A stretch of 64,000 nt of DNA from Botryllus schlosseri (lineage: Eukaryota). The stretch lies in assembly GCA_051294905.1 (NCBI GenBank), contig CM119373.1, positions 18,600,001-18,664,000 of the forward strand. The letters are read 5' to 3'. Made by a program: the position numbers and the translations under genes. Numbering within the stretch: position 1 is the first letter of the stretch; each line of letters opens with the position of its first letter. Below are positions 1-27,460 of this stretch, piece after piece. The notes beneath the pieces were generated by a model. It made no database searches. It was not told the origin of the DNA and was given only the letters and a program-made list of their open reading frames with translations.

Positions 1-19
1 ACACACTTACGAATTTCAG

Positions 20-220
20 TATTACGGTAATGAGTATTGGGTGTCGATTGATTGGTGGGGGACGGTCAGCTTTGCATACGCCCAAACGCAATGTGCAAGT
101 CAATCCGCCGAACTTGTAAGCATTTCCGACGAGGCTCAAGAGACCGAAATAGAGAGACAAGTGGATTACAGGATTCCGACCGATTGGAATGAGGTGATGC
201 TGTGGACTAACGACAGTCAG
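20..220 (+). CDS. Exon: C-type lectin domain, N-terminal half (YYGNEYWVS...SFAYAQTQCASQSAELVSISDEAQ...MLWTNDSQ)
   Basis: ttcag| acceptor and |gtatta donor, phase 0-0; CTLD motif 'AQxxCxxxxAxLVSI'. Confidence 0.8.
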
Positions 221-3200
221 GTATTATAATAATGTAGCCTGGAGTTATGGCATTATTGGACCCACACGATGTATAGCCTGCCATGTACGCTGCAATAACC
301 TATAATTCGAAACAATGAATGGTTCCCCGTACGCAACTTTCAATGCTTATCACAGAGTCCAGGAACGAATGTCATGCTTATTGTATGGAGAGAAGGATCC
401 GGTGGCCCGAATAGCAAGGGGAATTACTCGGCTAGTTACGAAGGTCACGGATACGTGTGTATGAAAGGGAATAACGAACGTAAGAAAACTAACTTTCGAA
501 AACATATGACTCGCAAGCCATATAAGACCCTTTTGATAATATGGCTTTCTAGTAAATCTTCGTTATCTATATAGCTTTAAGTCTATTCAATTTGAAGTGA
601 ACCCGAATATTTTCGGCTGCAACTCGTCAGGGGTAATCGTCCGCAACTAGTACAGACAGGCTAATTTCCAATCCTCTCTAGTTCTCGACTACCCCTAACG
701 GATGTCCAATCGAATATATTGTAATTTGTTTGTTATATTCACATACACTGTGTCGCTTATCGCCTATACAGTCATTTGAGCCACATCTTTGGTTTCAGCA
801 TAGTGCAGTGTTGGGATCAAGTCACTACCTTCGACTCACGAGTCATTTCGAGTCATTGCACATTTTGACTCGAGTCAAGTCAAGTCAAGTCAAGTCACGA
901 GTCAAGTCAAAATTCAAGTCAAGTTGCCTTTTAGAAGTATGAAGCATGATTACGTCATTGCATTTCTGAACCGATGAACGAATATAGAGTTGAATATACA
1001 TGCAATAAGGGGCTGTATCGCTCACATAAACGTAGAACTGTTGAACTACGTAAGTAATTGCATGGCCTCATTTTATAGTTACTAACCAAGACAGAGAATC
1101 GAGAAACGAATTGAGAAGATGCAATACAGTACCCATTTATACATATTGATATGATACAAATCGAGTCTGCGCCAATGGTTGAGGAGTATATAAACTACAT
1201 TCGATTACAATTTCAATCAAACAAGAGGTTCGGTTAAGGTAAGAACAGAGAACACAAATATATATTTTGCTTTCAAATTACTTTACTACTAGTTTACGAC
1301 AACGTAAGCTGTAGCTTCGATCACTTCGTTTGTGGTCAATATCTTAGTGAGAGAATATTGGAGGCTCAGTAAAACGCACGATCATTAAATGATCGGTCGC
1401 TCTCATGGGTTACACAAAAGTTTGGCGAACAATCCGAACAAGATGCAAGATGCAAGAGAAGGTGATTTTTACTTGATGACTTGAAATTGACTTGTGAATT
1501 TTGCTCCGAGTCACGAGTCAATCCACATTTCTGATACGCCGAGTCAAGTCAAGTCAAGTCATTTTAGCAAAGTGACTCGAGTCAAGTCAAGTCATACGAA
1601 AAGGTGACTCGAGTCTGATTCGAGTCAAGTCATGACTCGAGTCATCCAAACACTGGCATAGTGTCATATATGGTGTCGACACAAGCAAATCTCACGGCTC
1701 AGTGAAATTGTATCACGTCACAATTTTCATTTGGCTACAGGCAATTTGACGGTCATTTTGACCGGCTTGCCAAGCATTAAATTTAGTGAAAGGGGTATCA
1801 ATCGAAAGCTGACTCTGCACTGATTACGAAAATATATATTTTATACCGCTCGCGGCCCTGGAACCCCCACAATCAGCCTCGAATTTTTCATTGTTATGGG
1901 GATTGGCATTGAGACGCAACAATGCTGTCTGGCGAAACGAGAGAGTAACGAGAGACTTACTCTCTCGTTTCACCAGACAGCATTGTAACCCGGGCGATGA
2001 GGCGCCTCTCCGACACATGGAAGTTGGTACGAGCAGGGATTCGAACCAATGAGAATGGTGTCGTGACGCCGGGTTTTGACCGTCTGCGCCACTCGCTTCC
2101 CCCGATTTATGTGAATATGCTTTTCAATGATATTTTGAATCTCTGTACCGCCAAGAAGCTCTTTGTAAATTTTCTTTACTTTGTCGTAAATATTAGATAT
2201 GGAATCGGCATTTCAAAAGGATCTGTTTTTAAGTTTGACATTGTACCGGTTTCGACCATATAAACGGAACCATTGGGTACGCCACCGTTAGTAGCGATGA
2301 TTCTGCGCTAGCAATTGCTGCTAGAACATCATGCCACAGAACACATGTGTCACGATTCACGGTTTGATTTGCAAAAACGAAAATGAAGAAGCCTGGATTT
2401 GTCTCGACTACAAAGTTAGGTTTTGTTGTCCGATCGAGGGTAAGAGACAACTTTTTTGATGGCGGATATAACTTCAATTGAATTGCCGACACTTTCCATT
2501 GATATCAGTTATATTAATATTTTAAACCCAAGATCATATCCGTACTGCAGAATTGATGAGTTTCTTTGATTTAGAGTCTCGTTGTAGCGGAGACTCTGAG
2601 TGGACCATCTGGTTTGATGAAGATGATCCGGATGACGAAGGGGATTACGAGGAATTGAGCGATTTAAGGTACTTTTCTCCCAAGCGATTTCCTATTGCAG
2701 TATGCGGAACTGCCCATTCGTTGTAATGTGATACAATTTACAATTTCGAACCGACTATGATTGAAAATTGGGTATCTCGCGGAATATTGGACATTGAGGA
2801 TTGCTGGTTTTATATTTAGAGAAGGGTTCACCAACTTGTAGGCCATGGGCACCTCGAACCATGAGCCTATTTTCAGGGGGCATGACAACATTAATTATCT
2901 TAAAGTCTCACGATAACAACATAAATAAATAAAAACTGAAGAAAAATACTAGCATAGCTATGTGTTACTTTGTAATCTTGAGTTTACTTTCTTTGTTTTT
3001 CATTTAGATTTATTTAGAGTTATATTTGCACTGAACTTCAAAGTCGATGGTGCTTACGCCTTACGCCTTAGAAACTATTGGGAATAATTCGTCTATAGCC
3101 CTATAACCTACGACCCTTGATGCTCTCAGCAAATTAAATTAGCAAAGTATGGGGCCCCACATACATAAATATCTGAACATCATCACGTGAATCCGTGCAA

Positions 3201-6200
3201 ATTTAATATTATCCCGTCGATAAAGGCTCAAATGGCGGATTCAAGATATGGGTCTTGTTAGTTAGGGAGAACGTAGTTCATTGAAATCTAATTTCCGTTC
3301 ATTCGTGGGATTGGTAATATGTTTGGTAAACTTTATTCCGTGATTAGTGATGAGAAAAAACCACTTATGTGAAATATGCATACATCAATGATACGTGTTT
3401 GATGATCTGTGACCATACGTACATATTTCAGAAAGGAGCATAAGGATAAAATATGTAAAGAGCCTTCTGCAGTGCAAGGTCAACTTCTTGACGGTCGGCC
3501 ATGGCATGCGGGGGGCCAGGACGTGGAAATTTCCGAGACGGTGGGGTTGAAATGCAAAAACAAGGATCAAGAAGACGAGATGTGTCTCGACTACAAAGTC
3601 AGGTTTTGTTGTCCGAGCGACGGTGAGAGACTAATTTTTCGATGGCGAATGCAACTTGAATTGAGTTACCTATACTTTAAATTGATATCAGCTGACGTCA
3701 TATTTCGAGATGCGATTGTTGATATACTATGTTCTTTCCAATTCTCTACTGGTTGCTGATGATTACCCCTGACGAGTGCCAGCCGATAACATTCGGGTTC
3801 ATTTCAATATGAATATACTATTCAATTGTATAATGAAGTTCTGTACCTCCAAGAAGCTCTTTAAATATCAGCTAACAATATTTTAAAACCCAAGATAACA
3901 TCCGTATTGCGGAATTGGCGAGTGTATTCGCTTTAGAGGCTCGTTGTAGCGGAGACTCCAAGTGGACCATGTGGTTTGATGAAGATAATCCAGATGGAAA
4001 AGGAGATTACGAGGAATTAAGTGATTTAAGGTAGGTTTTTCTGATCGATTTCATTTGCACCTTGTGCAACTCCAAATTAGTTGTAATGTGATACAATTTG
4101 CTCTTTCAGGCTGACTATAACTGAAAAGCTTTTATCCATGGACATTGAGAATGTTCAGATTTTATATTTAGGACAACCTGCAGGCCGTGGACACCTCGGG
4201 GGCCACGAGCCATTTTCAGGGGGCATGAGACAATGTGTCATCTTAAAGTCTAAAAACCCACGTTAACGAAAGAAGGAAATTAAAATTGAATAAAAATACT
4301 AGTATCTACCTCTGATGCTCACAGCGCACTAAATTAGGAAAACATGGCGCTGGTCCTACAACCTTACATACATAAATATTTGAACATCATTACGTGAAGC
4401 CATGCAAGTTATATACATAGGCGCCGAGTTACGGGTGGCGGGGTGGCGCAGCCACCCCATGACACATTTATGGGGTGGCGGCCACCCCATACAATTAGAA
4501 TAAACGCCCGCCGTCTGCGATTTCAAATCATCAGCGCTGTCAATTAGCGAGTCCGTGATAGCGCGCAAATGCCAACTATTTAGCATTAACAGTCACGCGC
4601 GCGAATATTTGAACACGCAACTTCGTCGGCGACGACGAACTAGTGCTTTAAAACGGCCCAATAAGTTGTGATCCGTGATTAGTAATCATGCAGACAATCG
4701 AAGCAACCTCGTTTACGACGTCGATTTCGACACGCTGGCGCTGAGAAACACCATCTTCTATCTCGACCAGAGGAGCGAATTCACGTTCTCATCTCTTAAT
4801 TAAATTGTATTTGCGCCCATATTCGTTTACAAAATAATTCTCGTAGTTCCGTGATAGTCTCTTTAATTGGAGGCTTGGAGCGCGAAATAGGACATTGTGT
4901 TTGTGTATGCCTGCGAATTGAAAGTCATTCCGGCGCAAAGTGCGCATAATCATCACTTTAACAAAGCTTTGCCAAGCCAAGTTTTATCGGAAAATGCAAC
5001 AATGCAGCTCAAACCTCGTTATAATGAGCAAACAATCGTCGCGATGTCAGACTAGGACAGTGGTTCCCAACCTTTTTGTCTTCATTCCCCACTTCAGATT
5101 TACTCCGAGCCTTCATTCCCCACCAGGACCGTAACAGCTCTTTGTCAGCCCTCCCAATAAAAATCGTTGGTCTTGGGCCCCCAGGACCCCCTCAACCCCG
5201 CTGAGCCCTACGCTTTTCCCTGCTACTTATCAGCTGCATCGGGTCTACTGTTTAGCGCGTCGCCTTACTACGACTAAACGCGCGAGGCGCGAAAAATTTA
5301 TCTAATTCGTGTTTGAATCGGACAATATGATCGGGAATTTCATATATTTAGCTATCAATTTTTCATCCCCCCTCAGCTCACGTAATCAGATTTACTGGTA
5401 GAGCTGAGGGAGGTGTGTTGGAAAACGTAGGACCCCTAAATAAGAATTGAACATCTTCGGGCGGACCAGTTGGTATATTGACTTCGTTACATTATGCTAT
5501 TTCGTGACCTCCTATATCTGTTATGTCAGGAGATATGGAATCGCCAAAACTAAAAGGCACACACGATTTCAAATTGGTATTGCTTTACTGGCAAATCATT
5601 TTTCCTGCGGGATGGCATTTGTCCTGTGTGGTTCAGATCGCATTGACAGGAGCATTCGGCGTCAGCCATTTAAAGCCAGCCAATTAAACATATATATTGT
5701 ATATATATATCGAAGTTTTGGGTCACCACAAGGGCATCCCTTCTCGGCCAAGGTCTTCTCGTTGCTGATCGTTCTGGTACACTTCTCGGAGATGCATGTC
5801 ACATGGCCTATAACTTCATATGCCATGGTGCGTCGTAGCGCAGCAATGGCCGACACCGAGGTCTCCATTTCTATCAATTCTACGTAGTTTCGTGGGGGAA
5901 GGGTAACCAATAATCAGATATTTGGCAATATTAAATCGCGCACCCAGCGCGAAATTTTTTCGAAAAAGTGGCATAAATTTTTAAAAAATACTTTAATTTA
6001 TGTTAATTCACGTAAGAATTTCGGGCCCCTTCGAGCTCGCCCCCTCCCCAATTGGGGGATTTGGGGTGCGGAAGTTACGGTCCTTTTCCCCACTACCCAG
6101 CACTTTTGTCGTCACAGAGCAGCTATTTGCTGGTTTGACTACACAAGACACACAACCACACCAGTACGCAAGACAATCGCCTATAACTGCAACATAAAAC

Positions 6201-18200: not shown

Positions 18201-21200
18201 TGGTCCTGGAGCTCCCCAAAATCAGCCTCAAATTTTGCATTGTAACGGAGTTTGGTATTGTGACGCAACCATGCCGTCTGAAAGAAGGTGAGAAGTAGCG
18301 CAAACCGCAAGCGTATTGGTCATTGTTGCGCAAGCGATTGCGCATTCACACTCTCACTCTCACTGAGCACTTGCTCCTGAGCTGCGTTATATTATTCCAG
18401 GCGGCATTTTTGCGTCACAATACGTAGCTCCCTTTCAATGAAAAACTCGACACTGATTTTGACGGGTTGCTTGTGTCCACACCATTGTAGGACACTACGG
18501 TATTACATTTGTATGAATATAAATAATTTCATGAGAGTTATAACGGACATCAGATCTAAACTTGTGTGACTGGGCCTTTGCTAACCTAAAGCTAGTTGTG
18601 CATCCATGATCACGTCGAGAAAATACAACAGTGAAAAACGCGACAGGAATTTCACATAGGGTCAGGAAGCCATGACGAATGACCTCGACACCAAATAGAT
18701 ATATGATTTGCAACGGTGCATGCCACGAAAATCACTGAGCTGCAGTCTGAATGCGGTGACTAGCCGAGGAAAATGGCTGTTGCCAAAATGTTTTCAGACC
18801 TTCAACTTCATTTTGGGACCATATCATATTCAGAACGCAGTGCCCCTTTAACATTGAAGGGGAGATCTAACGCTTACGATCATACATATCTGGATATTAG
18901 CTTTTACAATGTTGTATCCAGGTTCCCTTCCCTGTACAATATGTAATGTACTATATATTTATTTTAGAACCTACCTGTAAGGGAGATTCGAAATGGACAA
19001 TGTGGTTTGATCGCGATAATCCTGGCGGCAAAGGTGACTTCGAACTATTGAGCGATTTAAGGTACACGGTTGTAAGTAAAAATTACATAATGACTAATTA
19101 CCAGTTACCAGCGCTGCTACACAAGTAGAAGCAGAAATAAAGCTACAAATTTATCTTCAATTCCAAGTAGAAGCAGATATTTCCGAAGCTAATTCAAGTG
19201 TTAGTAGAAAATGAAAGTTCTCAAGACAACTGAAGTGGGGTATTGTAATTTTAGACTGGTCATAAGACAGGTGCCTAAAAACTGTGTATGTGGAAGTAGC
19301 ATAAACAAGAACACTTGAGTAAGTATTGCAAGTACCTAGAAACTACTTGAGTAACACAAAAATGTTGATGTGCTTCGATACTGACCTCCTCTGAAAAAAA
19401 AGGTGAGCCAAATGACACTTTTAGAATAAGCTAATAGTAAATATGTAGTGTGCAATCAAAATTATTGGTGGACTTCATTCGGTACGCGAGATAAACACTC
19501 ACATTAGAATCTTATTTTCACAATATCTGCCCATCGATTACGCAATTATGATGACCGGTGGCCATAATTTAGAAAGGAGCATCCGAAGAAAATATGCAAG
19601 AGGCCATCTGCGGCTCAGGGCCGACTTCTAAACGGCAAACCATGGCATGCGGCGGGACAGGATGTTGCAGTGTCGAAGACATTAGGGTTGGTATGCAAAA
19701 CCAAGAATCAAGATGACGAGAGGTGTCGCGATTACAAAGTCAGGTTCTGTTGTCCGCTTAGAGGTAAGCAGTTGTTGTTGTTGTTTGACGACTACAATGG
19801 CCATTTACACTATGCCGTTTTTCTTAATTTTGATTCCGTAGTTGCCGAATTGTAGCATGGCCCACTTCTAGGCTTTTTTGACAACGCTTACGCGGATGAT
19901 ATGGCGATGAGGAGCCTAGATAAACCTCTAACACTTAGGTAGGTAAGTGGAGTCGACCTCGACCTCGGCCGGACTTGTACCCGCAATCCATTGGAGCCGG
20001 AGCTGTGCTTTATATACCACTACTCTATCTGACTATACTGGTGTAAGCAATCCCTATAGAAAATTCTACATCTAACTGCATTACCAAAGGTGGTCAAAGC
20101 AGTAAGCATTGCTACTTGAGTAGAAGTAATGCCGTTAACTTCCACTCAATTCAGATTTGAAGTAGCGCATTCGCATATATACAATACGTACTACAAACAG
20201 AGGTAAAAACCGGACGGCCAGAATAGTATACAAGTCTATATATGAAGTAAATTTGTTCGAGGTGTCACATACTTTGTATTGTAAATCCGAGGATGGTTGA
20301 TGTCGAAATTCCAAGATGCACCTCAGCGGCAACGGAAAATGGCTGATGACATTACAAATAGGTCGCATTTTGAAAATATATTCAGTTACCATGATACATG
20401 GGCTAATTCGCCCGATTGGTATGAGATTCACAAATAAACGGGGTACCTTACTAAAGCCCAAGTGTAAAACGTAATCGAATTTCCGCAACAACTGTTAAGG
20501 AGATGTTGAAATAATCCGAAATCGTCACCCAAAACCAGTAGAAGTAGCCTACTTTAATACAAACCATTTCTGCATTACAGAACTAGTAAGTTCATGATGA
20601 TTAACATATCACTGCGATTTTACATAACCAAATCTGATTTCTCTAGGTTCTCCATGCGAGGATGGCACTTTTTGCGGACCCAATGCGGAATGCCTTGACG
20701 GCAAGTGTACGTGCGTGGACCGCAAATTCGGTGAAAACGTACACGAAAATCTCGAAAGTATACTTGCTCCGGAAATAACATGCGGGGCGGATTTCATTCA
20801 ATTGACGTAATACTGTAGCTTATATAGTTTCATAACTAAACATCAATACCTTCCATATGCTCTTTCATACGTGTTGATATAATAGCGGATATAACATAAT
20901 GACTCCACCGATCACTATTAAAGCGTGTGGTGCAAATCAAGTCAGTGGCATTTTTCCAGTAGCAATTTCACACACCCAGTCCACTTGGTGTAAACGAGCC
21001 AAACACACCCGAATGGCTTATATATAGGGTCGTATACATTGGGCCAAAACTATTTCAAGCGGAAGTAGAATATGAACAGTCTGAAGACTGCTCAAGTAAT
21101 TAGTTTGAAATAAGTGCATTAGGTCGATGGGTCGGTTACTTTTCGTAGTTAAAGGAAGAGGCTATTTTGCTAATGCAATATGTATCTTCACGTCTAATGT

Positions 21201-24200
21201 CAAATGACCAAGGTCACTACGAATAGGCACAGAGTTCGAACCTATTTCCAGTTACGCTGATACAAGGGAAAGTTTCACGCAGGACTTATGACAATTTCTC
21301 TTCTAAAAATGATGCAAACAAATCACAATAGAAAATTCATACTGTTTTAATTCCAAACACGTGATTGCAGGCGACTAAATTTGTATGTAATTAGTTTTGC
21401 CAAAAACCATCGCGTGGTATAGTGGAATTAGTGTTACAGCATTACTCCTGGATTAGGTAGTGCTCGCACTAGGGTTGGATTATCCGGATAACGGTTAACC
21501 GGTTAACCGCAGGTATTTATACTATCTGATATCCGGATATAATTCTGCCGGTTAACCGGATAAAAAAGAATCGTTGCTAATGCGTTTTACACTTTTTAGT
21601 AAGCTTCAATAAGTCGTATTCAGTGTTGTGCGCGGCCGATTAGCGAGAAGCGTGTTGCCAATTAGCGTCTCGGACCTAGCATGCGTTGGCTCATATCTCC
21701 CGATGGCTTGGTGATGATATGCTGTTAAAGGGGCACTGCGCTCTAAAAATGATGTGGTCTCAAATTGAAGGTAAAAACGAACACAAATTTTTGGCCGCGG
21801 CCATTTCCTTCAGAGCGCCACCGTAATGGAGCTGCAATTAATTGAAATTTCTACAAGACCAGCTGCCGCCGCTGCTTAACCCGTTACATGGCACGATACC
21901 TTCACCGTCGCACTTGCTCGACGCGATTAGGCAGTCACGCAGAGAACGAATTTTAGATAGTTGTCAGCCGATGTTATGAAGGAATTGTGTCTAAGTTTCG
22001 TTATCTGCGTGACTGCCTTATCGCGTCGAACAAGTGCGAAGATGAAGACATCTTGCCATGTAACGGGTTAACCAGCCGCGGCAGCTGGTCTTGTAGAAAT
22101 TTCAATAAATTGCAGCTCCATTAAGGTGGCGTTCTGAAGGAAATGGCTGCGGCCAAAAATTTTTGTTCGATTTTACCTTCAATTTGAGACCACATCATTT
22201 TTAGAGCGCAGTGCCCCTTTAAGTGTATTCTGAGAGTGACACCGCGAAACTGAATGACATCTAATATTCGCAAACATGTGCGTGAGTGCAAGCGTAATTG
22301 ATTTCCGCTATTAATTAATTCGAAAAAAAGTCGAAACCCCATCATTTTATTTCAAACCCCCCTAAATTTTAGGCTGGTTGTGTGCCTGATCACGTGAATT
22401 AGAGCGAGGTATCATTTCGGCATCAATTCCAGTATCAGCTAGTCGTCCTTCTAGTACTCCAAATCTAAACATAAGAATGGTCAAAAGGAATGTAAAGTCG
22501 TCGAAGTTTCCAGGAAACCACCTGCCAACCTTAAGACTATATACGAAGCGCTGCTTACTATTCAGCCCACTTCTGTGGAAGCTGAAAGAGCATTCAATAC
22601 ACGTGGACTCTTTGTTACAAAATTCCTGTCTCGGCTACAGGATGCCACAATTGATGCATTGTGCTTTATAAGAAGGGCGTTGCAGAAGCAGTGAACATTA
22701 AATTGGCGTGGTTTTTCTCGTATTCGCTCGTACTGCGCCTGCGCGTGTAGGTATAGGTACCTCATGAAATCGATTGTCTCACTTAGCAGTTATTATCCGG
22801 TTAACCGGTTAGATAAATTCCAAATATCCGGATATATCCGTTATCCGGATAGTGAATATTATTGATATCCGAACTAACCCTAGCTCGTTCGCAAAATCTA
22901 CTTGAATACTCCTGCAAAAGTAGAAGTAGTCCGTTACTGATCATCGCCGACTAGACGTTCTGGAACGGTGACTGTATTTATTGGAATTTTGTCACGTTCA
23001 GAATCGACAGATGTGGGGCCAATGCTATTGGTTTCGATTTGGAGAAGCTGCGATTACTCGGAAAGGGGCCGAATCCCCCTAAACGCCGCCCAATAATGGA
23101 TCGTGCACGTCATTGCACCGGAAAATTAATCAATACCGAAGAGGGTTCTAAATACAGCTTCGTTCTGCGAGGCGACATGAAGCGATGCAATCCTATCGTC
23201 AATGTGAGTGTGCCCTGTTTGCTAGCATGTGCTGCATTGGTTGTTGGAGATCATTTCGTTTCATCTCAACTTTCCACACCTTATTTTGCAGGACAACGGA
23301 ACTCATATAACGTACGAGCACACGATGCGGGGCTCGCAATATCAAAGAATTGGTCACATAGTGCGCGATCGTCCAATTGAAGTCGATTTCGTTTGCGTGT
23401 ACGAAAGTGGTTCGGTCGGAAGCTTGCCGTCACCTGCACACCCACACATAAGGTAAAAGGATAGCTTCACATAATGCAACGCCAACCTCGGTCAGCAACG
23501 AAGTAGCCTGCTTCTCTCTTCTTTTTTAAACCAACAATTCCCTAGCTATCTGTTCTTGAAAAGTTGTTATTGGTCGGAAATATATTGCCACCAGGCCTTT
23601 CATGGTTTAGTAATACAATTCGCAACTCTGGCATCAGTATGAAATCGTTTATACGAAAATCATGCAATGCAGTACTGTTTCAGTGAAATGTTATTCTAAT
23701 ACTCTATATTCAGTATTGTCTCTGTCGGAATTAATTCTTCCGGAGAATACGACATCAGCATGCACCTGTGGAGCGACAGTGACTTCAGCGTGCCGATGAC
23801 ACCATATACATCCTTGCGGGTATGTGTCAAGTGCTAAGAAAAGATGTTATTCTTACTCACGATCAGTTATTTTATTTCATAATCAGCTCTCTGAAGACAA
23901 CACTGTATTCACAAAGTTTGATTTCCAGATTCCTTCTGATATCACGTAATATTGATTAGGATGTGACTCTCATGTTAAATTGTCGAAAGTTTAGTAATTC
24001 AATGTAGATTCAATCCATCGAGCCATGTAGGCTGATAAGCTTTGAGCATGCACACATTTGGACTTGAAACAAATCATTCAAAGATTCTGATCGGATTTCG
24101 ATTCACAGACTTATGCGAAACTGAATCCAGTGTGGATTTTGATATGATATTTTTGATAATATTGGATATGGGCTTGGATTTAAAGGATTACAGAAGTTGG

Positions 24201-26738
24201 ATATTTTGAATTTAATAAATCCGCACATCTCTATTCGCCTCATATATTCGTGCTGATCCCTCGGAGTAAACACAACTTCAAAGCTTTCCGCGTAACTATA
24301 ATCAGATAGGCTGTGATTATCTATTATCAAGATAATAAAAATCGAGATTAAGCAAATAGCGAACTCATATCACAGTTAAGCCAGTGTCAAGTCATGGGTT
24401 TTACAGCTTGACCCATGTATCCCTCTCTAAAGCAAGCAGATATCAGCAAAGCTTTTAGGACGATGCGAAATGAGTGTAAGATGCGAATCGAGTTGTATGC
24501 TCTATTAAATAACAGATTTTGGAATTTGAAATAAACTAGTTATCTCACACGCAAAAGGTGCACATTCCGATTCCGCTTGGTATGAACTCATCTTTCCAGG
24601 CTATCTCGATGACGATCGCGCAGCTCTTGGAAAATAATTGATATTGTATTTTGAAACTTAAGGTACCGGATCCCGTATATGTGTCACTGGAAGCAACAGG
24701 TATTGATGATCTTGTGTTGTCCATTGAAGCCTTCACAGCATATTCGTCTAGTAACCGATCTACTGCTTTGTCAGCAACGCTGATTAGGGACGGGTAAGAC
24801 CTACCTTGTATACGTCACACAATGCATTCATTCCCTATATGCTGAATTCTAATTCTAGTTTTCATGTTGCTTCGGGCACGTTAATATATATTTAAACTGA
24901 GCTTTGACGCTTCATCGCACCTGCATGAAAGCTTTAGAACACATGACTTTGTTATCAGTGGGCACACTGAAGAATAACACCACTAGATACTATTACTATA
25001 ATGATTCCACGTAGATGTAAGGCGACAACTTCTAGGCACTAAAGCAGTGGTTCTCAACCTTTTTATCTTCGTGGGCCCATTTTAAACCGTCATGTACCCA
25101 TACGGTTGTGTCTTGAATATCGATTTGATAGTGTTGTTGTTCTGTATTTAACAAAAAACATTGCTGCTTATCGTCTGACGGATGCCGATAATAATCCATT
25201 TCGACACAAATAGGTGGTGGCGAATGTAATATTGACGCATAAAGCTCCCGGCGACACCATTATTACAGAACATATCACTTCCAGTCATTTTTATCTACGA
25301 GCTCCTCTTGAAGTGATTCTGGAATACTATTGCGATGTATATCACGGGGGAAATGGATTACACGGCGGGGTTTCAATCCCGGTTGAGAACTACTGCACTT
25401 AAGCATTGTCGAGTCGTCTACTAATGTTCCTCTGTATGGCCAAAGGTTGTTAATAAATAACTTCAGAAGACTTATTTCACTTGCCTCACACTACTGATCA
25501 TTTTATTACTGCGTCTTAGGTTCTCGTCATAACACTAAAACAAGAAAATCATTTGGAGATTTTTGCATAGTATAGGCCTATGTGTGTAGCTTTACCGAAA
25601 TCAAATTAACACAGTATCTGTAATACTGATAGCATGCTTCTCCTCAAATTTGTTTCAGGGTTTTATCATGGCCAATGTATGCAATAAATTGGTAGTTGAT
25701 ACAGGTATTTGACTATGCTTGCTCTTGTATGTAAGATTGTCTCTTTCGGCATTTGTTTGAATATAAGTAAAGTTAATTAAACTCAACTTTTCAAAGGTAA
25801 TGAAATACCGAGTAGTAAGTGGCTTGGGAACATGCGTCCCGTATATGTTTTGCAGGGTGCACAAGTGCAATGGGTAAGCTGGATTAGGAAATTATAGTTC
25901 GTGGCGAAATGTTGCACGCTACAGTTCAGTATACTAAGGTGCACAGTGAACACTTCACTCACTGTGGCTGTAACATGATTGAGAGACAATATCGTAGATG
26001 ACTCATTCTTATATATTCCTAGTTGTCCAGACAGAGCCACTGGGTTGGAGATACTTGAGATCGGCCAATCTAACGAAGTGAAATTCTGGTTTCCATCCTT
26101 TCTCCTCACTGATGGTGCCCCGGAAGACGAAATGGAAGGGACCATTTATCTCGAAAGCTTCGTTACTGTCTGCGAAGCGAATTCGGAGGAGTGCATTCCG
26201 GTAATAACCGTGATTTATACATGTATTGTAGGCTGTGGTCTGTAGTAGTTTGATTGGTTCTGAACAAATTTTATGTAATCTCACACCAATTGCACGCTAT
26301 GCTATATAGCATCGATCGACTGGAGTAGTCATGTAATTACCAAAGGCTTAAGATGTCCCTGAAATCAGTCGTAAAGTTTTTCTTTCAAAATTAGAAGAAT
26401 CCAAGAGGCATTATAATGTCTCCAGTGAACACTAGACAATGGATACTAGAACGGAACGAAAATATTCACTAGTGCAATATGTTCAAGTTCACTATAGTCA
26501 AATCATTCGATATGACAACCATGATTTGTAAATTACCAATAAACGGCCTGTGAAATTTGAATCTTAATTTTCGACCTTGGTCACTTGAGTAGATGTGCAA
26601 AACCAGCACCATCGTAATAGAATTCACCTGCTATCGAAGTATTCAGCGAAGACGTGTTGCGTGCTGACGTGAATGATATCATATTTAATCCAGGACTGCG
26701 ATGTAAGGCCGTTGGTTGTGAATCCAGCATTACCGTGA
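20..26738 (+). CDS. Spliced gene, 5'-incomplete: C-type lectin + 5x WxxW + EGF + ZP domain extracellular protein (about 910 aa in window, 19 exons listed below)
   Basis: The 19 exons have AG/GT ends and matching phases and sum to 2733 nt (911 codons including TGA). Domain motifs are recognised in the joined translation. The link from the lectin exons to the WxxW exons is inferred from phase compatibility (1 to 1). Confidence 0.85.
356..479 (+). CDS. Exon: C-type lectin domain, C-terminal part (SPGTNVMLIVW...GHGYVCMKGNNE)
   Basis: cacag| acceptor in phase with the previous exon; the 'YVCMK' end resembles CTLD 'YICEK'; |gtaaga donor, phase 1. Confidence 0.6.
601..634 (-). ncRNA. Minimal type I hammerhead ribozyme (Penelope-like-element type)
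   Basis: Minus strand reads ACCC-CUGACGA-G(UUGCAGC)C-GAA-AAUAUU-C-GGGU: complete core, 4-bp stem I, 1-bp stem II, palindromic stem III, UUC cleavage triplet. Confidence 0.8.
806..1655. mobile_element. hAT-type MITE with AGTCA-rich ends
   Basis: TIR CAGTGTTGGGAT/ATCCAAACACTG, perfect TSD GCATAGTG; related copies at about 13430-13715 and 60585-61490. Confidence 0.9.
1990..2103 (-). mobile_element. tRNA-derived SINE fragment
   Basis: Minus strand GGGGAAGCGAGTGGCGCAGACGGT (A box)...GGTTCGAATCCC (B box); homologous to 46054-46277. Confidence 0.7.
2263..2439 (+). pseudogene. Degenerate WxxW second-half exon (B0), frameshifted
   Basis: 3' part reads GLICKNENEEAWICLDYKVRFCCPIE with an intact |gtaaga donor; in-frame TAG at 2322; an upstream 'LAIAART..HVS' motif lies in a different frame; no preceding A exon found. 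Start is approximate. Confidence 0.55.
2575..2668 (+). CDS. WxxW repeat 1, exon A (SRCSGDSEWTIWFDEDDPDDEGDYEELSDL)
   Basis: ttag|...|gtac, 94 nt, phase 1-2, WxxWF motif. Confidence 0.92.
3432..3622 (+). CDS. WxxW repeat 1, exon B (KEHKDKICKEPSAVQG...CLDYKVRFCCPSD)
   Basis: ttcag|...|gtgag, 191 nt, phase 2-1. Confidence 0.92.
3715..3845 (+). repeat. Second copy of the hammerhead-bearing short repeat; core mutated (GAA to GAT) at 3765-3798
   Basis: acccctgacgagtgccagccgataacattcgggttca; flanks align with the reverse complement of about 578-655 and with 37070-37205. Confidence 0.7.
3937..4030 (+). CDS. WxxW repeat 2, exon A
   Basis: tttag|...|gtagg, 94 nt, WTMWFDEDNPDGKGDYEELSDL. Confidence 0.92.
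5058..6513. mobile_element. hAT-type MITE hosting a nested element
   Basis: TIR CAGTGGTTCCCAAC/GTTTGGGAACCACTG, perfect TSD GACTAGGA. Confidence 0.9.
5124..6085. mobile_element. hAT-type non-autonomous element (CAGGACCGTAAC family), nested
   Basis: TIR CAGGACCGTAAC/GTTACGGTCCTT, TSD TTCCCCAC; family copies at about 31023-31982, 47065-48481 and 59080-59562. Confidence 0.88.
6805..7896. mobile_element. hAT-type MITE containing a nested MITE at 7447-7717
   Basis: TIR CAGGGGTGGGCAAACT/AGTTTGCCCACCCCTG, perfect TSD AGCTAGCG. Confidence 0.9.
9607..9797 (+). CDS. WxxW repeat 2, exon B
   Basis: ttcag|...|gtatg, 191 nt, ends CLDYKVRFCCPIK. Confidence 0.92.
9945..10038 (+). CDS. WxxW repeat 3, exon A
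   Basis: ttcag|...|gtatg, 94 nt, WTMWFDEDNPDDKGDYEELSDL. Confidence 0.92.
10255..11300. repeat. Two oppositely oriented copies (about 10255-10620 and 10945-11300) of the MITE family of 17999-18500
   Basis: Shared 'tttgaccggcttgcc..gcattaaattt..atcaatcgaaagct' block, also at 1656-1945. Confidence 0.7.
13908..14098 (+). CDS. WxxW repeat 3, exon B
   Basis: ttcag|...|gtatg, 191 nt, ends CHDYKVRFCCPIK. Confidence 0.92.
14241..14334 (+). CDS. WxxW repeat 4, exon A
   Basis: tttag|...|gtaag, 94 nt, WTRWFDRDNSGGKGDFELLSDL. Confidence 0.92.
15775..17020 (+). mobile_element. Decayed Chapaev3-like (CMC) DNA transposon with a transposase remnant at about 16430-16630
   Basis: TIR CACTGGTCAACA/TGTTGACCAGTG; flanks TGA/TAA; remnant NMRTKVHFLFRNLGIF..QGERLYQDI..KERYQ matches the 'KxHFL..HL..F..GERFHQD..MExRYQG' motif recalled for this family. 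Confidence 0.7.
17060..17250 (+). CDS. WxxW repeat 4, exon B
   Basis: tacag|...|gtatg, 191 nt, ends CLDYKVRFCCPIK. Confidence 0.92.
17999..18500. mobile_element. TA-flanked MITE (Tc1/mariner-pogo type)
   Basis: About 32-bp TIR CCATAGTGTCCTACAATAGTGTGGACACAAGC (2 mismatches between ends), TA on both sides. Confidence 0.8.
18968..19061 (+). CDS. WxxW repeat 5, exon A
   Basis: tttag|...|gtaca, 94 nt, WTMWFDRDNPGGKGDFELLSDL. Confidence 0.92.
19573..19763 (+). CDS. WxxW repeat 5, exon B
   Basis: tttag|...|gtaag, 191 nt, ends CRDYKVRFCCPLR. Confidence 0.92.
20647..20806 (+). CDS. Exon: 5-Cys EGF-like module and start of ZP-N (SPCEDGTFCGPNAECLDGKCTC...APEITCGADFIQL)
   Basis: tctag|...|gtaata, phase 1-2; EGF Cys spacing; ZP-N first strand 'ITCGADFIQL'. 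Confidence 0.85.
21729..22218. mobile_element. Foldback (near fully palindromic) TTAA-flanked MITE, Kolobok-like
   Basis: TTAA|AGGGGCACTGCG...CGCAGTGCCCCT|TTAA, arms about 235 bp; partial copies near 18700-18850, 54780-55035 and 57260-60350. Confidence 0.8.
22512..22694 (+). pseudogene. hAT transposase dimerization-domain remnant (RKPPANLKTIYEALLTIQPTSVEAERAFNTRGLFVTKFLSRLQDATIDALCFIRR)
   Basis: Matches the hAT C-terminal 'P.TSVxxERxFS.G..T..RxRL.D.TI' motif. Confidence 0.85.
23002..23203 (+). CDS. Exon: ZP-N (IDRCGANAIGFDLEKLRL...RHCTG...KRCNPIVN)
   Basis: ttcag|...|gtgagt, phase 2-0. Confidence 0.85.
23292..23452 (+). CDS. Exon: ZP-N end (DNGTHITYEHTM...IVRDRPIEVDFVCVY)
   Basis: ttgcag|...|gtaaaa, phase 0-2; canonical ZP-N 'NGTHIxY..N/T' and 'FxCxY'. 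Confidence 0.9.
23714..23819 (+). CDS. Exon: ZP-C start (IVSVGINSSGEYDISMHLWSDSDFSVPMTPYTSLR)
   Basis: ttcag|...|gtatgt, phase 2-0; ZP-C 'GxFxxxMxLYxDxxF' pattern. Confidence 0.85.
24663..24793 (+). CDS. Exon: ZP-C (VPDPVYVSLEATGIDDLVLSIEAFTAYSSS...LIRDG)
   Basis: ttaag|...|gtaag, phase 0-2; 'VYVxL' and 'LIxDG(C)' motifs. Confidence 0.85.
26023..26200 (+). CDS. Exon: ZP-C (CPDRATGLEILEIGQSNEVKFWFPSF...IYLESFVTVCEANSEECIP)
   Basis: cctag|...|gtaata, phase 2-0; 'GC', 'RFxFxxF' and 'YLxxxVxVC..C.P' motifs. Confidence 0.9.
26694..26738 (+). CDS. Probable last coding exon (DCDVRPLVVNPALP*)
   Basis: atccag| acceptor, phase 0; supplies the last ZP-C Cys (CxPxC); TGA at 26736-26738. Confidence 0.6.
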   Translation, partial: DCDVRPLVVNPALP

Positions 26739-27206
26739 CAGGAATCCGCAAAGCCGGGGGATTTGGAAGGTAATTTCTTATTTTAACACAGTTCGTAACG
26801 ATGAATTTGCCTTGACCATCTAGTGTCGTATTTCAGACGACATTATCAATTACGATTTCTGGATGCTTTTGCGATGAATTCAGTCGTATGATCACATGAT
26901 TTTGCTTATGCTAGCAGTGCATATCAGATTGTTTAGTCAGTGCGATAGCATGGGTCCGTGTACTTGGCCGCGAAAAGCCGGATTTTCATGAGATTAAAAT
27001 ATGCGTCCGTAAATTTTAACCCTGAGAATGGTACAGCGTTAACACAGAATCAATGGACCTATATTTTGAGTTTTGACACGCATTGCCTTGACCAACAGGC
27101 GAAATTCCTCACAACTATCTAGCAGTCAAACAATATCATTGTAGCCAAATAGCCGAATATTCAACCACTTTCGGCGTACAACGCCATACAATTTACACAA
27201 GCATAG

Positions 27207-27460
27207 CGGGGGACATAGCGTAATGGTGATGATAAGCGGCTGCCAATGTGGTGGACTTGGTTGGATTCCCGTCGGGGGTTTATCTGGGCTCCTCTTCCCT
27301 CGCCGTCGCCTTTCTTACCGCGATAAAAAAAAAGCCCAGAGAAAGACCCGACGGAAGAAATCACTCAAAAGGAATGGAAAGAACTATAGTAGAAAGAGTC
27401 GCGGCTTAAAAAAAAGATCAACATCGAAAAGAACTGTGACATCGGGCACTCTTGGCTGAG
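27207..27460 (+). mobile_element. tRNA-derived SINE
   Basis: A box TAGCGTAATGGT, B-like GGTTGGATTCCC; body 'gtcgggggtttatctgggctc...aaagcccagagaaaga' shared with 46054-46277. Confidence 0.6.

What the first reader, a model, noticed from the sequence alone, without database searches (positions are those of the whole stretch)
20..26738. Unusual architecture: C-type lectin + five WxxW repeats + EGF + uromodulin/tectorin-type ZP module
Seen: 19 in-phase exons give CTLD-(WxxW)5-EGF-ZP with no transmembrane segment. Established: ZP modules polymerise into filaments (uromodulin, tectorins, egg coats); WxxW repeats occur in MUC2/MUC5, CILP and larvacean oikosin-1; ascidian vitelline-coat proteins such as HrVC70 combine EGF and ZP. 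I do not recall this four-domain combination. Inference: a filament-forming protein with a lectin tip on a WxxW arm, a candidate component of the mucus feeding net, tunic or egg coat, or a microbe decoy.
Basis: partly seen in the sequence, partly recalled or inferred. Interest (0 to 1): 0.78.

Follow-up and report, generated by a model that had tools for sequence, protein, structure and literature searches.

The report
Lectin-like, WxxW, ZP mosaic matrix gene
This is one real, transcribed animal gene (other scan notes call the genome a sea squirt's) that strings two lectin-like heads, five mucin-type WxxW domains, a small EGF-like module and a zona-pellucida module into one extracellular protein, an apparently undescribed mix of ordinary parts whose function is still unknown.

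Summary
RNA-derived contigs from public runs show the key joints. An upstream lectin-like module is spliced to the window's lectin-like module (3 runs). The second lectin-like module is spliced directly to the first WxxW exon (1 run, 100% identical).

Corrections:
- The gene starts upstream of the window. The "first exon" begins 6 bases before window position 1, not at 20.
- There are two lectin-like modules, not one.
- The 5' end (signal peptide) was not found.
The ZP-C exon more likely reads on to a stop at 26243-26245, giving a 14-residue hydrophobic tail.

Domains:
- The "C-type lectin" has a CTLD-like fold but lacks the sugar/Ca2+ motifs and one disulfide.
- Five WxxW (CysD) domains are confirmed.
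- The "EGF" is a 5-cysteine EGF/EB-like module.
- ZP-C is firmly confirmed but has lost two conserved cysteines; ZP-N is probable.

Ka/Ks of 0.11-0.27 argues for a working gene. Filament formation and lectin activity are not shown. I found no paper describing this architecture, and database architecture queries were not possible. The scan has another note on the same WxxW array. Verdict: a new variant of a known kind, of moderate interest.

The parts
1..220 (+). Exon Lec2a: first exon of the second CTLD-like module. The exon really begins 6 bases upstream of the window (window -6), in phase 1.
   Evidence: Acceptor ctcag|CC just before the window, homologous to the upstream copy's acceptor. 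Contig pieces start at L013:3294 = window -6, and the joint 1139->3294 is seen in 3 runs.
356..479 (+). Exon Lec2b: second exon of the second CTLD-like module. It ends in phase 1.
   Evidence: Contigs join 217/220->353/356 (the 3-base CAG is ambiguous) and 479->2575. The translation ...GGPN...GYVCMK is collinear with the end of canonical CTLDs.
2340..2435 (+). Relic half WxxW exon ('B0'). It is frameshifted, out of phase, and skipped by the transcript.
   Evidence: Pfam Mucin2_WxxW 59-88/88, E 1.1e-5. Its upstream half lies in another frame. The contig joint 479->2575 skips it. The apparent joint at its end is cross-mapping of the W2B-W3A junction (table 5c).
2575..2668 (+). W1A: WxxW unit 1, exon A
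   Evidence: Pfam 1-33/88. Joined to Lec2b in X1 record 6.
3432..3622 (+). W1B: WxxW unit 1, exon B
   Evidence: Pfam Mucin2_WxxW 25-88/88, E 2.4e-14.
3937..4030 (+). W2A
9607..9797 (+). W2B
9945..10038 (+). W3A
13908..14098 (+). W3B
14241..14334 (+). W4A
17060..17250 (+). W4B
18968..19061 (+). W5A
19573..19763 (+). W5B
20647..20806 (+). Exon holding the 5-Cys EGF/EB-like module and the first strand of ZP-N (…EITCGADFIQL)
   Evidence: Pfam EB, E 1.5e-5, 25.4 bits against a cut-off of 24.3. 52% identical to the C9 paralog's exon.
23002..23203 (+). ZP1: ZP-N, first part
   Evidence: The only paralog is at C9:20627592, 47% identical.
23292..23452 (+). ZP2: ZP-N, last part, plus linker
   Evidence: Pfam ZP-N 63-101/101, E 0.054. 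The paralog's exon matches in the same register, E 0.13.
23714..23819 (+). ZP3: interdomain linker and start of ZP-C
   Evidence: 41% identical to the paralog.
24663..24793 (+). ZP4: ZP-C, first half. The conserved Cys C5 is replaced by Phe.
   Evidence: Pfam ZP-C 27-75/133, E 0.071. hhalign against this genome's canonical ZP-C. The exon break at profile position ~76 is shared with many ZP genes of this genome.
26023..26245 (+). ZP5: ZP-C, second half (conserved Cys C7 replaced by Ser). The preferred model reads on through the possible donor at 26200/26201 into the tail VITVIYTCIVGCGL and a stop at 26243-26245.
   Evidence: The paralog reads through at the same point into a 22-residue hydrophobic segment.
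26539..26544 (+). AATAAA, a candidate polyadenylation signal about 295 bases after the stop
   Evidence: Sequence read directly. Inference only.
26621..26773 (+). Doubtful alternative 3' exon.
   Evidence: Weak acceptor (cgtaatag|), no counterpart in the paralog, and it lies beyond the AATAAA. Not tested with RNA.

Best explanation
This is one intact, transcribed, lineage-specific gene. It spans at least window -2616 to about 26560 on the + strand, with 20 known coding exons and an unfound 5' exon. It encodes an extracellular mosaic protein of at least 1,032 residues with these parts in order:
- two compact CTLD-like modules;
- five directly abutting CysD/WxxW domains, each 95 residues with 6 Cys and no mucin (PTS) spacers;
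- one 5-Cys EGF/EB-like module;
- a ZP module (ZP-N plus ZP-C);
- most likely a short hydrophobic C-terminus.

Every module is bounded by phase-1 introns, so the gene was built by exon shuffling. The steps are inferred from sequence similarity:
- An EGF-ZP core is shared with a paralog on C9.
- A WxxW unit was amplified locally to five copies.
- A lectin-like pair was duplicated to or from a multi-lectin gene on C2. A broken WxxW half-exon lies in the junction intron.

Most likely mode of action (inferred, not shown): the ZP module ties the protein into a ZP-type apical extracellular matrix, or onto other ZP proteins. The CysD array supplies non-covalent cross-links, as described for MUC2 CysD and proposed for Oikopleura oikosin 1. 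The CTLD-like heads bind an unknown ligand by a mode other than canonical Ca2+-dependent sugar binding.
For: Gene model:
- 20 exons, all GT..AG, one open frame.

RNA:
- Spliced joints at exactly the predicted boundaries in Logan contigs.
- Lec1a->Lec1b and Lec2a->Lec2b are seen.
- Lec1b->Lec2a appears in X4, X14 and X11.
- Lec2b->W1A appears in X1 record 6 with 0 mismatches.
- X4 record 26 carries 379 further bases, which equals 94+191+94.
- No second near-identical copy of the lectin exon exists in the genome (next best 84%), so the joints are not from a retrocopy.
- Runs holding words from the lectin exons also hold words from the ZP exons.

Selection:
- Ka/Ks is 0.11-0.23 among the five WxxW units.
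- Ka/Ks is 0.23-0.27 between the lectin modules and their C2 paralogs.

Domains:
- Pfam Mucin2_WxxW and EB.
- ZP-C hhalign probability 97-98.6%, P 7.5e-11 and 4.9e-16.
- ZP-N partial match.

CTLD-like fold:
- Pfam Lectin_C E 0.068 on exon a.
- A PDB profile search puts CTLDs on top, E 0.04.
- In the Atlas, 85 of 100 hits fall in Lectin_C-labelled sets.
- hhalign against 10 canonical CTLDs of the same genome gives P 1.4e-4. The best of 20 column shuffles gives 0.016.
- An AF2 model of exon a, searched against 48,161 PDB representatives, has its top 17 hits all CTLDs, Z 4.3-5.2.

Origin:
-.

CysD function:
- PMC3195396.
Against: - The 5' end and signal peptide were not found, so secretion is inferred from the domain types only.
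- The 3' end was not tested with RNA.
- The ZP-C has lost two conserved cysteines. The canonical ZP-C exons of this genome and the C9 paralog keep them.
- I saw no furin-type site between ZP-C and the tail.
- The hydrophobic tail (14 residues) is too short for a normal membrane span. Polymerisation competence is therefore uncertain.
- No tissue or expression level is known.
- No ortholog with the same architecture was found in another species. Only three short lectin-exon fragments were found among 1.84 billion proteins.
- CTLD evidence rests on the N-terminal half. Each line is individually weak.
Confidence: 0.6

Rival explanations
1. The gene is the same, but its ZP module no longer polymerises. 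The protein would be a soluble secreted binder, adaptor or decoy, comparable in principle to the non-polymerising ZP modules of endoglin and betaglycan (recalled from knowledge, not tested here). It would not be a filament subunit.
For: - C5 is replaced by Phe and C7 by Ser in ZP-C.
- The C-terminal hydrophobic segment is 19 residues shorter than in the paralog.
- No basic cleavage motif is seen after ZP-C.
Against: - Both missing cysteines may be partners of one disulfide. That connectivity is from memory and was not tested. A paired loss can be tolerated without losing the fold.
- The rest of ZP-C aligns well with canonical copies, probability 97%.
- Whether the tail acts as a GPI signal or an EHP-like strand was not tested.
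Confidence: 0.25
2. It is a vitelline-coat (egg-coat) ZP protein, like the EGF-ZP proteins of ascidian eggs. The variable N-terminal arm would serve in gamete recognition.
For: - Ascidian egg coats are built of ZP proteins, many with EGF repeats. Ciona has 11 ZP proteins in its vitelline coat; CiVC57 is VWF + 24 EGF + ZP + TM (PMC8849226, PMC3543715).
- One contig allele differs at 4 amino acids and 1 silent site within 73 codons of the lectin-like exon.
Against: - No tissue information is available.
- There is only one EGF-like module.
- Ascidians are highly polymorphic in general.
- The polymorphism sample is a single contig.
Confidence: 0.15
3. It is a recently assembled chimeric gene on its way to decay, transcribed but without a useful product.
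For: - A relic exon lies in the junction intron.
- Conserved cysteines are lost.
- The C-terminal hydrophobic segment is shortened.
- No ortholog was found.
Against: - The frame is open across 20 exons and more than 1,030 codons.
- Ka/Ks is 0.11-0.27 in both the WxxW array and the lectin modules.
- Spliced RNA is present in runs of 4 studies.
Confidence: 0.07
4. There are two separate genes, a lectin-like gene and a WxxW-EGF-ZP gene, merged only on paper.
For: - A 2.1-kb intron with a transposon and a dead exon separates them.
- The C2 paralog of the lectin pair has no WxxW exons behind it.
Against: - A contig joins window 479 to 2575 exactly at GT..AG with 100% identity.
- The phases match, 1-1.
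- A 738-base contig extends 379 bases beyond the lectin exons.
Confidence: 0.03

Closest known systems
Ascidian vitelline-coat ZP proteins (CiVC57, HrVC70)
   Same: A C-terminal ZP module preceded by an EGF-type module, in a genome that other scan notes call ascidian. ZP proteins with swapped N-terminal arms are the rule in this group (PMC8849226, PMC3543715).
   Different: - CiVC57 has a VWF domain, 24 EGF repeats and a transmembrane domain.
- Here there is a single 5-Cys EGF/EB-like module, five CysD domains and two CTLD-like modules.
- There is no full membrane span.
- Expression in eggs is not known.
Oikosin 1 of Oikopleura dioica (larvacean house protein)
   Same: Tandem, directly adjacent CysD/WxxW domains in a tunicate extracellular structural protein (13 CysD, 11 with WxxW; PMC3195396).
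   Different: That paper describes oikosin 1 only as 13 tandem CysD domains and mentions no ZP or lectin-like module. Here the array has only five units and is an arm on a ZP protein. Homology beyond the domain family was not tested.
[quoted passage not shown]
   Same: Pfam family Mucin2_WxxW, with a WxxW motif in each unit. MUC2 CysD forms non-covalent dimers (PMC3195396).
   Different: - Mucin CysD domains are about 110 residues with ten invariant cysteines and sit inside PTS regions (PMC3195396, PMC4948705).
- Here the units have 95 residues and 6 cysteines.
- No PTS, VWD, C8 or TIL was found in the 20 known exons.
Uromodulin and tectorins (polymerising ZP proteins with other N-terminal modules)
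   Same: The general plan: N-terminal interaction modules, then EGF-type module(s), then a C-terminal ZP module with a hydrophobic C-terminus.
   Different: - No D8C, NIDO or VWD domains.
- Two conserved ZP-C cysteines are missing.
- No cleavage site or GPI signal is shown.
- The exon-wise PDB sequence-profile searches returned no ZP chain.
In-genome paralog at C9:20.626-20.631 Mb
   Same: The EGF/EB-like exon and ZP exons 1-5 have the same intron positions and are 41-55% identical.
   Different: - The paralog keeps both ZP-C cysteines.
- It ends in a 22-residue hydrophobic segment.
- It has other, unidentified exons upstream instead of the WxxW and lectin modules.
Canonical C-type lectin CRDs (e.g. 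langerin, ASGPR, CLEC5A, SPL-2)
   Same: The fold of the N-terminal half. The top 17 of 48,161 PDB representatives are CTLDs (Z 4.3-5.2). The profile alignment is collinear to the terminal ...YVC.K.
   Different: - About 24 residues shorter.
- Only 2 cysteines; the C2-C3 pair is absent.
- GPN in place of EPN/QPD, and no WND.
- Below the Pfam threshold.

Membership tests
C-type lectin-like domain (CTLD; Pfam Lectin_C) | Sequence match to the family profile above the curated threshold | tested here: not met
   Exon a alone scores 14.3 bits, E 0.068, against a cut-off of 22.6. Exon b has no hit. The spliced domain could not be submitted because it has no reference. It is not among the 98 genome-wide Lectin_C matches at E <= 1e-5.
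C-type lectin-like domain (CTLD; Pfam Lectin_C) | CTLD fold (beta0-beta1-alpha1-alpha2-beta2 ... beta5) | tested here: met
   This holds for the N-terminal 73 residues only.
- AF2 model with pLDDT 69, secondary structure E-E-H-(E)-H-E.
- VIA-align against 48,161 PDB representatives: ranks 1-17 are all CTLDs, Z 4.3-5.2, 61-68 residues aligned.
- Foldseek: about 37 of the top 50 are CTLDs, but E > 1.
- hhalign against the same genome's CTLDs: P 1.4e-4, controls >= 0.016.
C-type lectin-like domain (CTLD; Pfam Lectin_C) | Two conserved disulfides (C1-C4 and C2-C3) | tested here: not met
   There are only two cysteines per module, in the alpha1 position and in the terminal YVC. The region that holds C2 and C3 is deleted in the alignment to canonical CTLDs.
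Ca2+-dependent carbohydrate-recognition domain (true C-type lectin) | EPN or QPD motif plus WND motif of the primary Ca2+/sugar site | tested here: not met
   GPN (GGPN or DGPN) is conserved across 10 of the 15 paralogous modules assembled here. The stretch where WND would lie is absent.
Mucin2_WxxW / CysD domain | Profile match over the threshold and a WxxW motif | tested here: met
   B exon 54.2 bits (cut-off 22.4), positions 25-88/88. A exon 22.4 bits, positions 1-33/88. WT[IMR]W is present in all five units. Atlas neighbours are all Mucin2_WxxW.
Mucin2_WxxW / CysD domain | Ten invariant cysteines of mucin-type CysD (PMC3195396) | tested here: not met
   Six cysteines per 95-residue unit.
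Gel-forming mucin | VWD-C8-TIL units and PTS (mucin) regions (PMC4948705) | tested here: not met
   The CysD units abut directly with no Ser/Thr/Pro-rich spacer. No such exons are in the 20-exon model. The part upstream of the known exons is unknown.
EGF-like domain | Six-cysteine EGF pattern or a profile match | tested here: inconclusive
   Five cysteines (C-x6-C-x5-C-x4-C-x-C). The Pfam hit is to the EB module, 25.4 bits against 24.3, positions 16-45/52. PF00008 gives no hit; only weak EGF_integrin, E 0.034. The pattern is the same in the C9 paralog.
ZP module | ZP-C domain | tested here: met
   - The spliced ZP4+ZP5 was compared with ZP-C exons of this genome, most of which pass Pfam's cut-off.
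- Probability is 97.1%, P 7.5e-11 alone, and 98.6%, P 4.9e-16 with the paralog.
- Paralog exons hit Pfam ZP-C at 30-75 (E 2.5e-4) and 76-132 (E 1.5e-3).
- The intron position is shared.
ZP module | ZP-N domain with four conserved cysteines | tested here: inconclusive
   Partial Pfam ZP-N match at 63-101/101, E 0.054 (paralog 0.13). Five cysteines lie in the expected stretch. PDB profile searches of single exons found nothing.
ZP module | Full set of conserved ZP-C cysteines | tested here: not met
   The cysteine of ...hCyA... is Phe and that of ...yihC... is Ser in this gene. The C9 paralog and every canonical exon used that spans those columns keep both.
Polymerising ZP precursor (uromodulin/ZP3 type) | Consensus furin-type cleavage site, external hydrophobic patch, and a membrane anchor (TM or GPI) after ZP-C | tested here: inconclusive
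   - By eye, no R-x-K/R-R after ZP-C in either 3' model.
- The read-through tail is 14 hydrophobic residues. The paralog has 22.
- GPI or EHP function is not testable here.

The most novel reading that the evidence does not exclude
A young, lineage-specific ZP protein whose ZP-C has lost one disulfide, its cleavage site and its membrane anchor. It would not build filaments itself. Instead it would cap or decorate the ZP filaments of other proteins (for example in the egg coat or another apical matrix) with a charge-bipolar CysD cross-linking arm and two polymorphic, sugar-site-less CTLD-like heads. That would make it a ready-made adaptor for recognition, such as gamete or microbe binding.
Probability: 0.12. 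Interest if true: 0.65.

Novelty: new variant of a known kind. Interest (0 to 1): 0.4.

Why it matters
ZP-module proteins build egg coats, the uromodulin network of urine, the tectorial membrane and many invertebrate apical matrices. What differs between them is the N-terminal arm.

This gene shows an arm I found described nowhere: two CTLD-like heads on five CysD domains. It was assembled recently by phase-1 exon shuffling, and the traces are still visible. These are a dead half-exon, a donor-like locus on another chromosome, and a paralog that keeps the ancestral ZP end.

It offers a compact natural test of two questions:
- Do CysD domains work as non-covalent cross-links outside mucins?
- Does a ZP-C that has lost two conserved cysteines and its anchor still polymerise?

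It also exposes a lineage-restricted family of compact CTLD-like modules, with at least 35 copies in this genome, that standard profiles miss.

Tried and rejected
- **Exon B0 (2340-2435) as a coding exon:** rejected. It is frameshifted and out of phase, and the contig skips it. The apparent joint 5734->5883 (L013) carries the inserted letters of the W2B|W3A junction, so it is cross-mapping.
rejected.
- **ORF 20963-21100 as an exon:** rejected. It lies in the EGF->ZP1 intron.
- **P0001, P0003, P0004 (2,192-4,119 aa) as relatives of the lectin exon:** rejected. They look like bacterial repeat proteins (one carries a Listeria-Bacteroides repeat). Each repeat scores about 3 bits, summed over 11-22 copies.
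- **Signal-peptide exon:**
  - A scan of 17 kb upstream for ATG + hydrophobic core + phase-1 donor gave only weak candidates. The best is window -4263..-4176, MHFLQHILLLSSSSTVLY....
  - No 5' exon is conserved between the C3, C2 and C16 loci. The one shared upstream piece, window -2812..-2637, looks like a repeat.
- **An intron-less or in-frame paralog of the lectin module, to fold the whole domain by reference:** none found. The spliced domain was therefore not folded or scanned, because a spliced protein has no reference.
- **The search for homologous proteins with the Lec1a ORF and the ZP5 ORF:** blanks. These are uninformative because of the length window and the word filter.
- **The look-up of encoding contigs for P0002:** a 1-kb contig with no DNA.
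- **PDB profile searches with single ZP exons:** no ZP hit.
- **Foldseek on the half-domain model:** no E <= 0.001.
- **Related exons in the rest of the window (26.8-64 kb) or in the 20 kb upstream:** none beyond Lec1.
- **Rfam at gathering threshold on 1-28000:** nothing.
- **Complex prediction:** not used. I make no binding claim.
Full report
**Place and organism**

The window is G000:C3:18600001-18664000 (+) of a 495.5-Mb assembly. Notes by other agents of this scan call the genome an ascidian's. I did not test that.

**Gene model**

I fixed every boundary by hand from the DNA and by homology between repeats. All introns are GT..AG and the frame stays open.

Each WxxW unit is two exons:
- Exon A is 94 bases, entering in phase 1 and leaving in phase 2.
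- Exon B is 191 bases, entering in phase 2 and leaving in phase 1.

Each unit is therefore a phase 1-1 cassette. So are the lectin-like module (227 + 124 bases) and the entry into the EGF exon.

**The start lies outside the window**

The frame of the first lectin exon stays open beyond window position 1. The sequence before position 20 (HTYEFQ) is homologous to the same part of a second copy 2.6 kb upstream. A good acceptor (ttctcag|CC) lies 7-8 bases before the window. The exon therefore starts at window -6 in phase 1.

The upstream copy (Lec1: window -2616..-2390 and -2275..-2161) is also a phase 1-1 cassette.

**RNA evidence**

The two run searches found public runs of the same organism holding words from the lectin exons and from the ZP exons. 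Several runs hold both: X1, X2, X4, X5, X7 and X14.

I laid the contigs of four runs from four studies on a 6-kb stretch, L013 = window -3299..2700. The joints fall exactly on my boundaries:
- L013 910->1025 joins Lec1a to Lec1b (X4 record 22).
- L013 1139->3294 joins Lec1b to Lec2a, GT..AG, in X4, X14 and X11.
- L013 3517->3653 joins Lec2a to Lec2b. This equals 3520->3656, because CAG repeats at both ends.
- L013 3779->5875 is window 479->2575 and joins Lec2b to W1A. It appears in X1 record 6 with no mismatch.

X4 record 26 (738 bases) covers Lec2a and Lec2b and has 379 further bases. That is exactly W1A+W1B+W2A (94+191+94). The pieces themselves were not listed, so I count this only as consistent.

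The lectin exon has a single 100% copy in the genome and the next best is 84%. The spliced forms therefore come from RNA, not from a retrocopy.

The lectin exons are not a separate gene.

**The skipped relic**

Between Lec2b and W1A lie a dispersed repeat (window ~800-1500, scored matches at about 40 places, 79-92% identical) and a broken WxxW B exon (2340-2435). The 3' half of that exon matches Pfam positions 59-88, but its 5' half is in another frame. The transcript skips it.

A joint seen at its end carries the extra letters TAAAGAGCCTTCC. That is the W2B|W3A junction, so it is cross-mapping between repeats.

**The lectin-like module**

By Pfam alone it is not a Lectin_C member: exon a scores E 0.068 and exon b nothing. 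Several other lines, partly overlapping in input, point to a CTLD fold:
- A profile of 22 paralogous exon-a sequences puts CTLDs on top of the PDB list: Endo180 at E 0.04, then LOX-1, CD93, CLEC4F and Ly49.
- In the Atlas feature search, 85 of 100 hits fall in Lectin_C-labelled sets.
- A profile of 15 spliced modules aligns with 10 canonical single-exon CTLDs of the same genome at P 1.4e-4.
  - The best of 20 column-shuffled controls is 0.016, the reversed template 0.67 and an unrelated template 0.79.
  - With relaxed alignment settings it is collinear to the end: W.EG ~ W.DG, GPN ~ the EPN position, GYVC.K ~ FICE.
- An AF2 model of exon a (pLDDT 69) was searched without prefilter against 48,161 PDB representatives. 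CTLDs hold ranks 1-17, with Z 4.3-5.2 and 61-68 of 73 residues aligned.

The module is about 24 residues shorter than canonical CTLDs. It has two cysteines only, GPN instead of EPN/QPD, and no WND region. I therefore call it a compact CTLD-like module and do not call it a lectin.

The family has at least 35 copies in this genome (C16:16.03-16.18 Mb, C2, C3). Among 1.84 billion representative proteins it found only three short ORF fragments at 36-56% identity. The three large 'hits' are spurious.

**The WxxW array**

There are five units of 95 residues, each with six cysteines and a W-T-x-W motif. They abut directly with no Ser/Thr/Pro-rich spacer.

- The units are 62-86% identical to each other.
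- Their B exons are 70-93% identical to one another and at most 48% identical to WxxW exons elsewhere in the genome (C11, C2, C4). The array therefore grew in place.
- Units 1-3 are acidic (net -7 to -14) and units 4-5 basic (+6, +7). This agrees with the scan's other note on this stretch.
- Pairwise Ka/Ks is 0.11-0.23.

In the literature this domain is the CysD domain of MUC2/MUC5, about 110 residues with ten cysteines, and it forms non-covalent dimers. Oikosin 1 of Oikopleura carries 13 of them in tandem (PMC3195396, PMC4948705).

**EGF-like module and ZP module**

The exon 20647-20806 holds a 5-cysteine module that reaches Pfam's EB cut-off (25.4 against 24.3 bits) and only weakly matches an EGF model. 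It then runs into the first ZP-N strand.

Single ZP exons give only partial Pfam matches, but in the right order and register:
- ZP-N 63-101, E 0.054.
- ZP-C 27-75, E 0.071.
- For the paralog, ZP-C 30-75 at E 2.5e-4 and 76-132 at E 1.5e-3.

I then spliced ZP4+ZP5 locally and compared them with ZP-C exons of the same genome, most of which pass Pfam's cut-off. The probability is 97.1%, P 7.5e-11 alone, and 98.6%, P 4.9e-16 with the paralog. The exon break at profile position ~76 is shared with many ZP genes here.

The alignment shows that two conserved cysteines are Phe and Ser in this gene. The C9 paralog, and every canonical exon I used that spans those columns, keep both. From memory, not tested, these two are partners of one disulfide (C5-C7). 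If so, this would be a paired loss.

Exon-wise sequence-profile searches of the PDB returned no ZP chain. 'Uromodulin/tectorin-type' is therefore unsupported.

**The 3' end**

In the C9 paralog the frame runs on past the equivalent of the 26200 donor into 22 consecutive hydrophobic residues and a stop. That is very unlikely for intron sequence.

In this gene the same read-through gives VITVIYTCIVGCGL and a stop at 26243-26245, with AATAAA 295 bases later.

However, the CCG|GTAA donor is present in both paralogs.

I prefer the read-through end, at about 60:40. It needs RNA, which I could no longer lay.

**Origin**

- The EGF-ZP core has one paralog, at C9. It is 41-55% identical per exon, has the same intron positions, and has other upstream exons.
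- The Lec1-Lec2 pair, introns included, is about 80% identical in DNA to the first two of three modules at C2:25.389-25.393 Mb. No WxxW exons follow there within about 5 kb.
- Ks against C2 is about 0.39, similar to Ks among W1-W3 (0.32-0.47).
- Together with the uniform phase-1 boundaries and the dead half-exon at the seam, this reads as recent exon shuffling. The direction of the copy is an inference.

**What it does**

Nothing here shows function. The most economical reading is a matrix protein. The ZP module would anchor it in, or onto, a ZP-type matrix. The CysD array would add non-covalent cross-links. The CTLD-like heads would bind something by a non-canonical mode.

Against simple filament formation stand the lost cysteines, the missing cleavage motif and the stunted hydrophobic end. 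A non-polymerising, soluble or filament-decorating role is a serious rival.

Decay is unlikely, given the open frame, Ka/Ks well below 1 and spliced RNA in runs of four studies.

**Novelty**

- No paper in the library couples CysD/WxxW with a ZP module.
- Ascidian ZP proteins described so far carry EGF repeats and VWF-type domains.
- I could not run an architecture query, and the protein searches were blind to full-length relatives. Commonness in databases therefore remains open.
- Mosaic extracellular genes are common in this genome according to the scan's other notes.

I rate the finding as a new variant of a known kind, of moderate interest.

Noticed in passing
G000:C16:16.03-16.18 Mb, C2:25.389-25.393 Mb, C2:23.05 Mb, C2:2.34-2.36 Mb, C3:30.498 Mb: A family of compact, two-exon CTLD-like modules: at least 35 exon-a and 30 exon-b matches, mostly in one 150-kb cluster on C16. 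Pfam's Lectin_C misses it. Among 1.84 billion representative proteins it finds only three short fragments.
   Followed up: partly
L011/L012 (G000:C9:20626652-20630755): Paralogous EGF/EB-like + ZP gene. It keeps both ZP-C cysteines and ends in a 22-residue hydrophobic segment. Its upstream exons (e.g. L011:3549-5347) look like other, unidentified beta-rich modules.
   Followed up: partly
window -17999..-12578 and -9999..-4567 (L005:2001-7422 vs L004:5433-1): A 5.4-kb inverted duplication at 99.65% identity, with arms about 2.6 kb apart, just upstream of the gene. It is either a real palindrome or mobile element, or an assembly artefact.
   Followed up: no
window 800-1500: Dispersed repeat of about 680-700 bases in the lectin-to-WxxW intron, with scored matches at about 40 genomic places, 79-92% identical.
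   Followed up: partly
window 21686-21826 (+) and 22121-22345 (-): Inverted copies of the same ORF-like sequence (…LLKGHCALKMMWSQIEGK…) in the EGF-to-ZP1 intron. Probably the ends of a transposon.
   Followed up: no
window 75, 77, 82, 102, 114 (exon Lec2a): One contig of run X4 differs from the assembly at five listed places in 73 codons. Four of them change the amino acid (A>E, Y>D, Q>R, L>P). This hints at high protein polymorphism in the lectin-like head, from a single contig only.
   Followed up: partly
window 27145-27460: A basic, low-complexity ORF pair. The opposite strand resembles a sequence in the C9 paralog's locus (L011:4578-4771). It is likely a short interspersed element, not an exon.
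   Followed up: no
P0001, P0003, P0004: Giant repeat proteins, seemingly bacterial, reach E 1e-12 to 1e-26 against a 67-residue query. They do so only by summing 11-22 near-identical weak repeats (about 3 bits each). This is a trap for phmmer whole-sequence E-values.
   Followed up: yes
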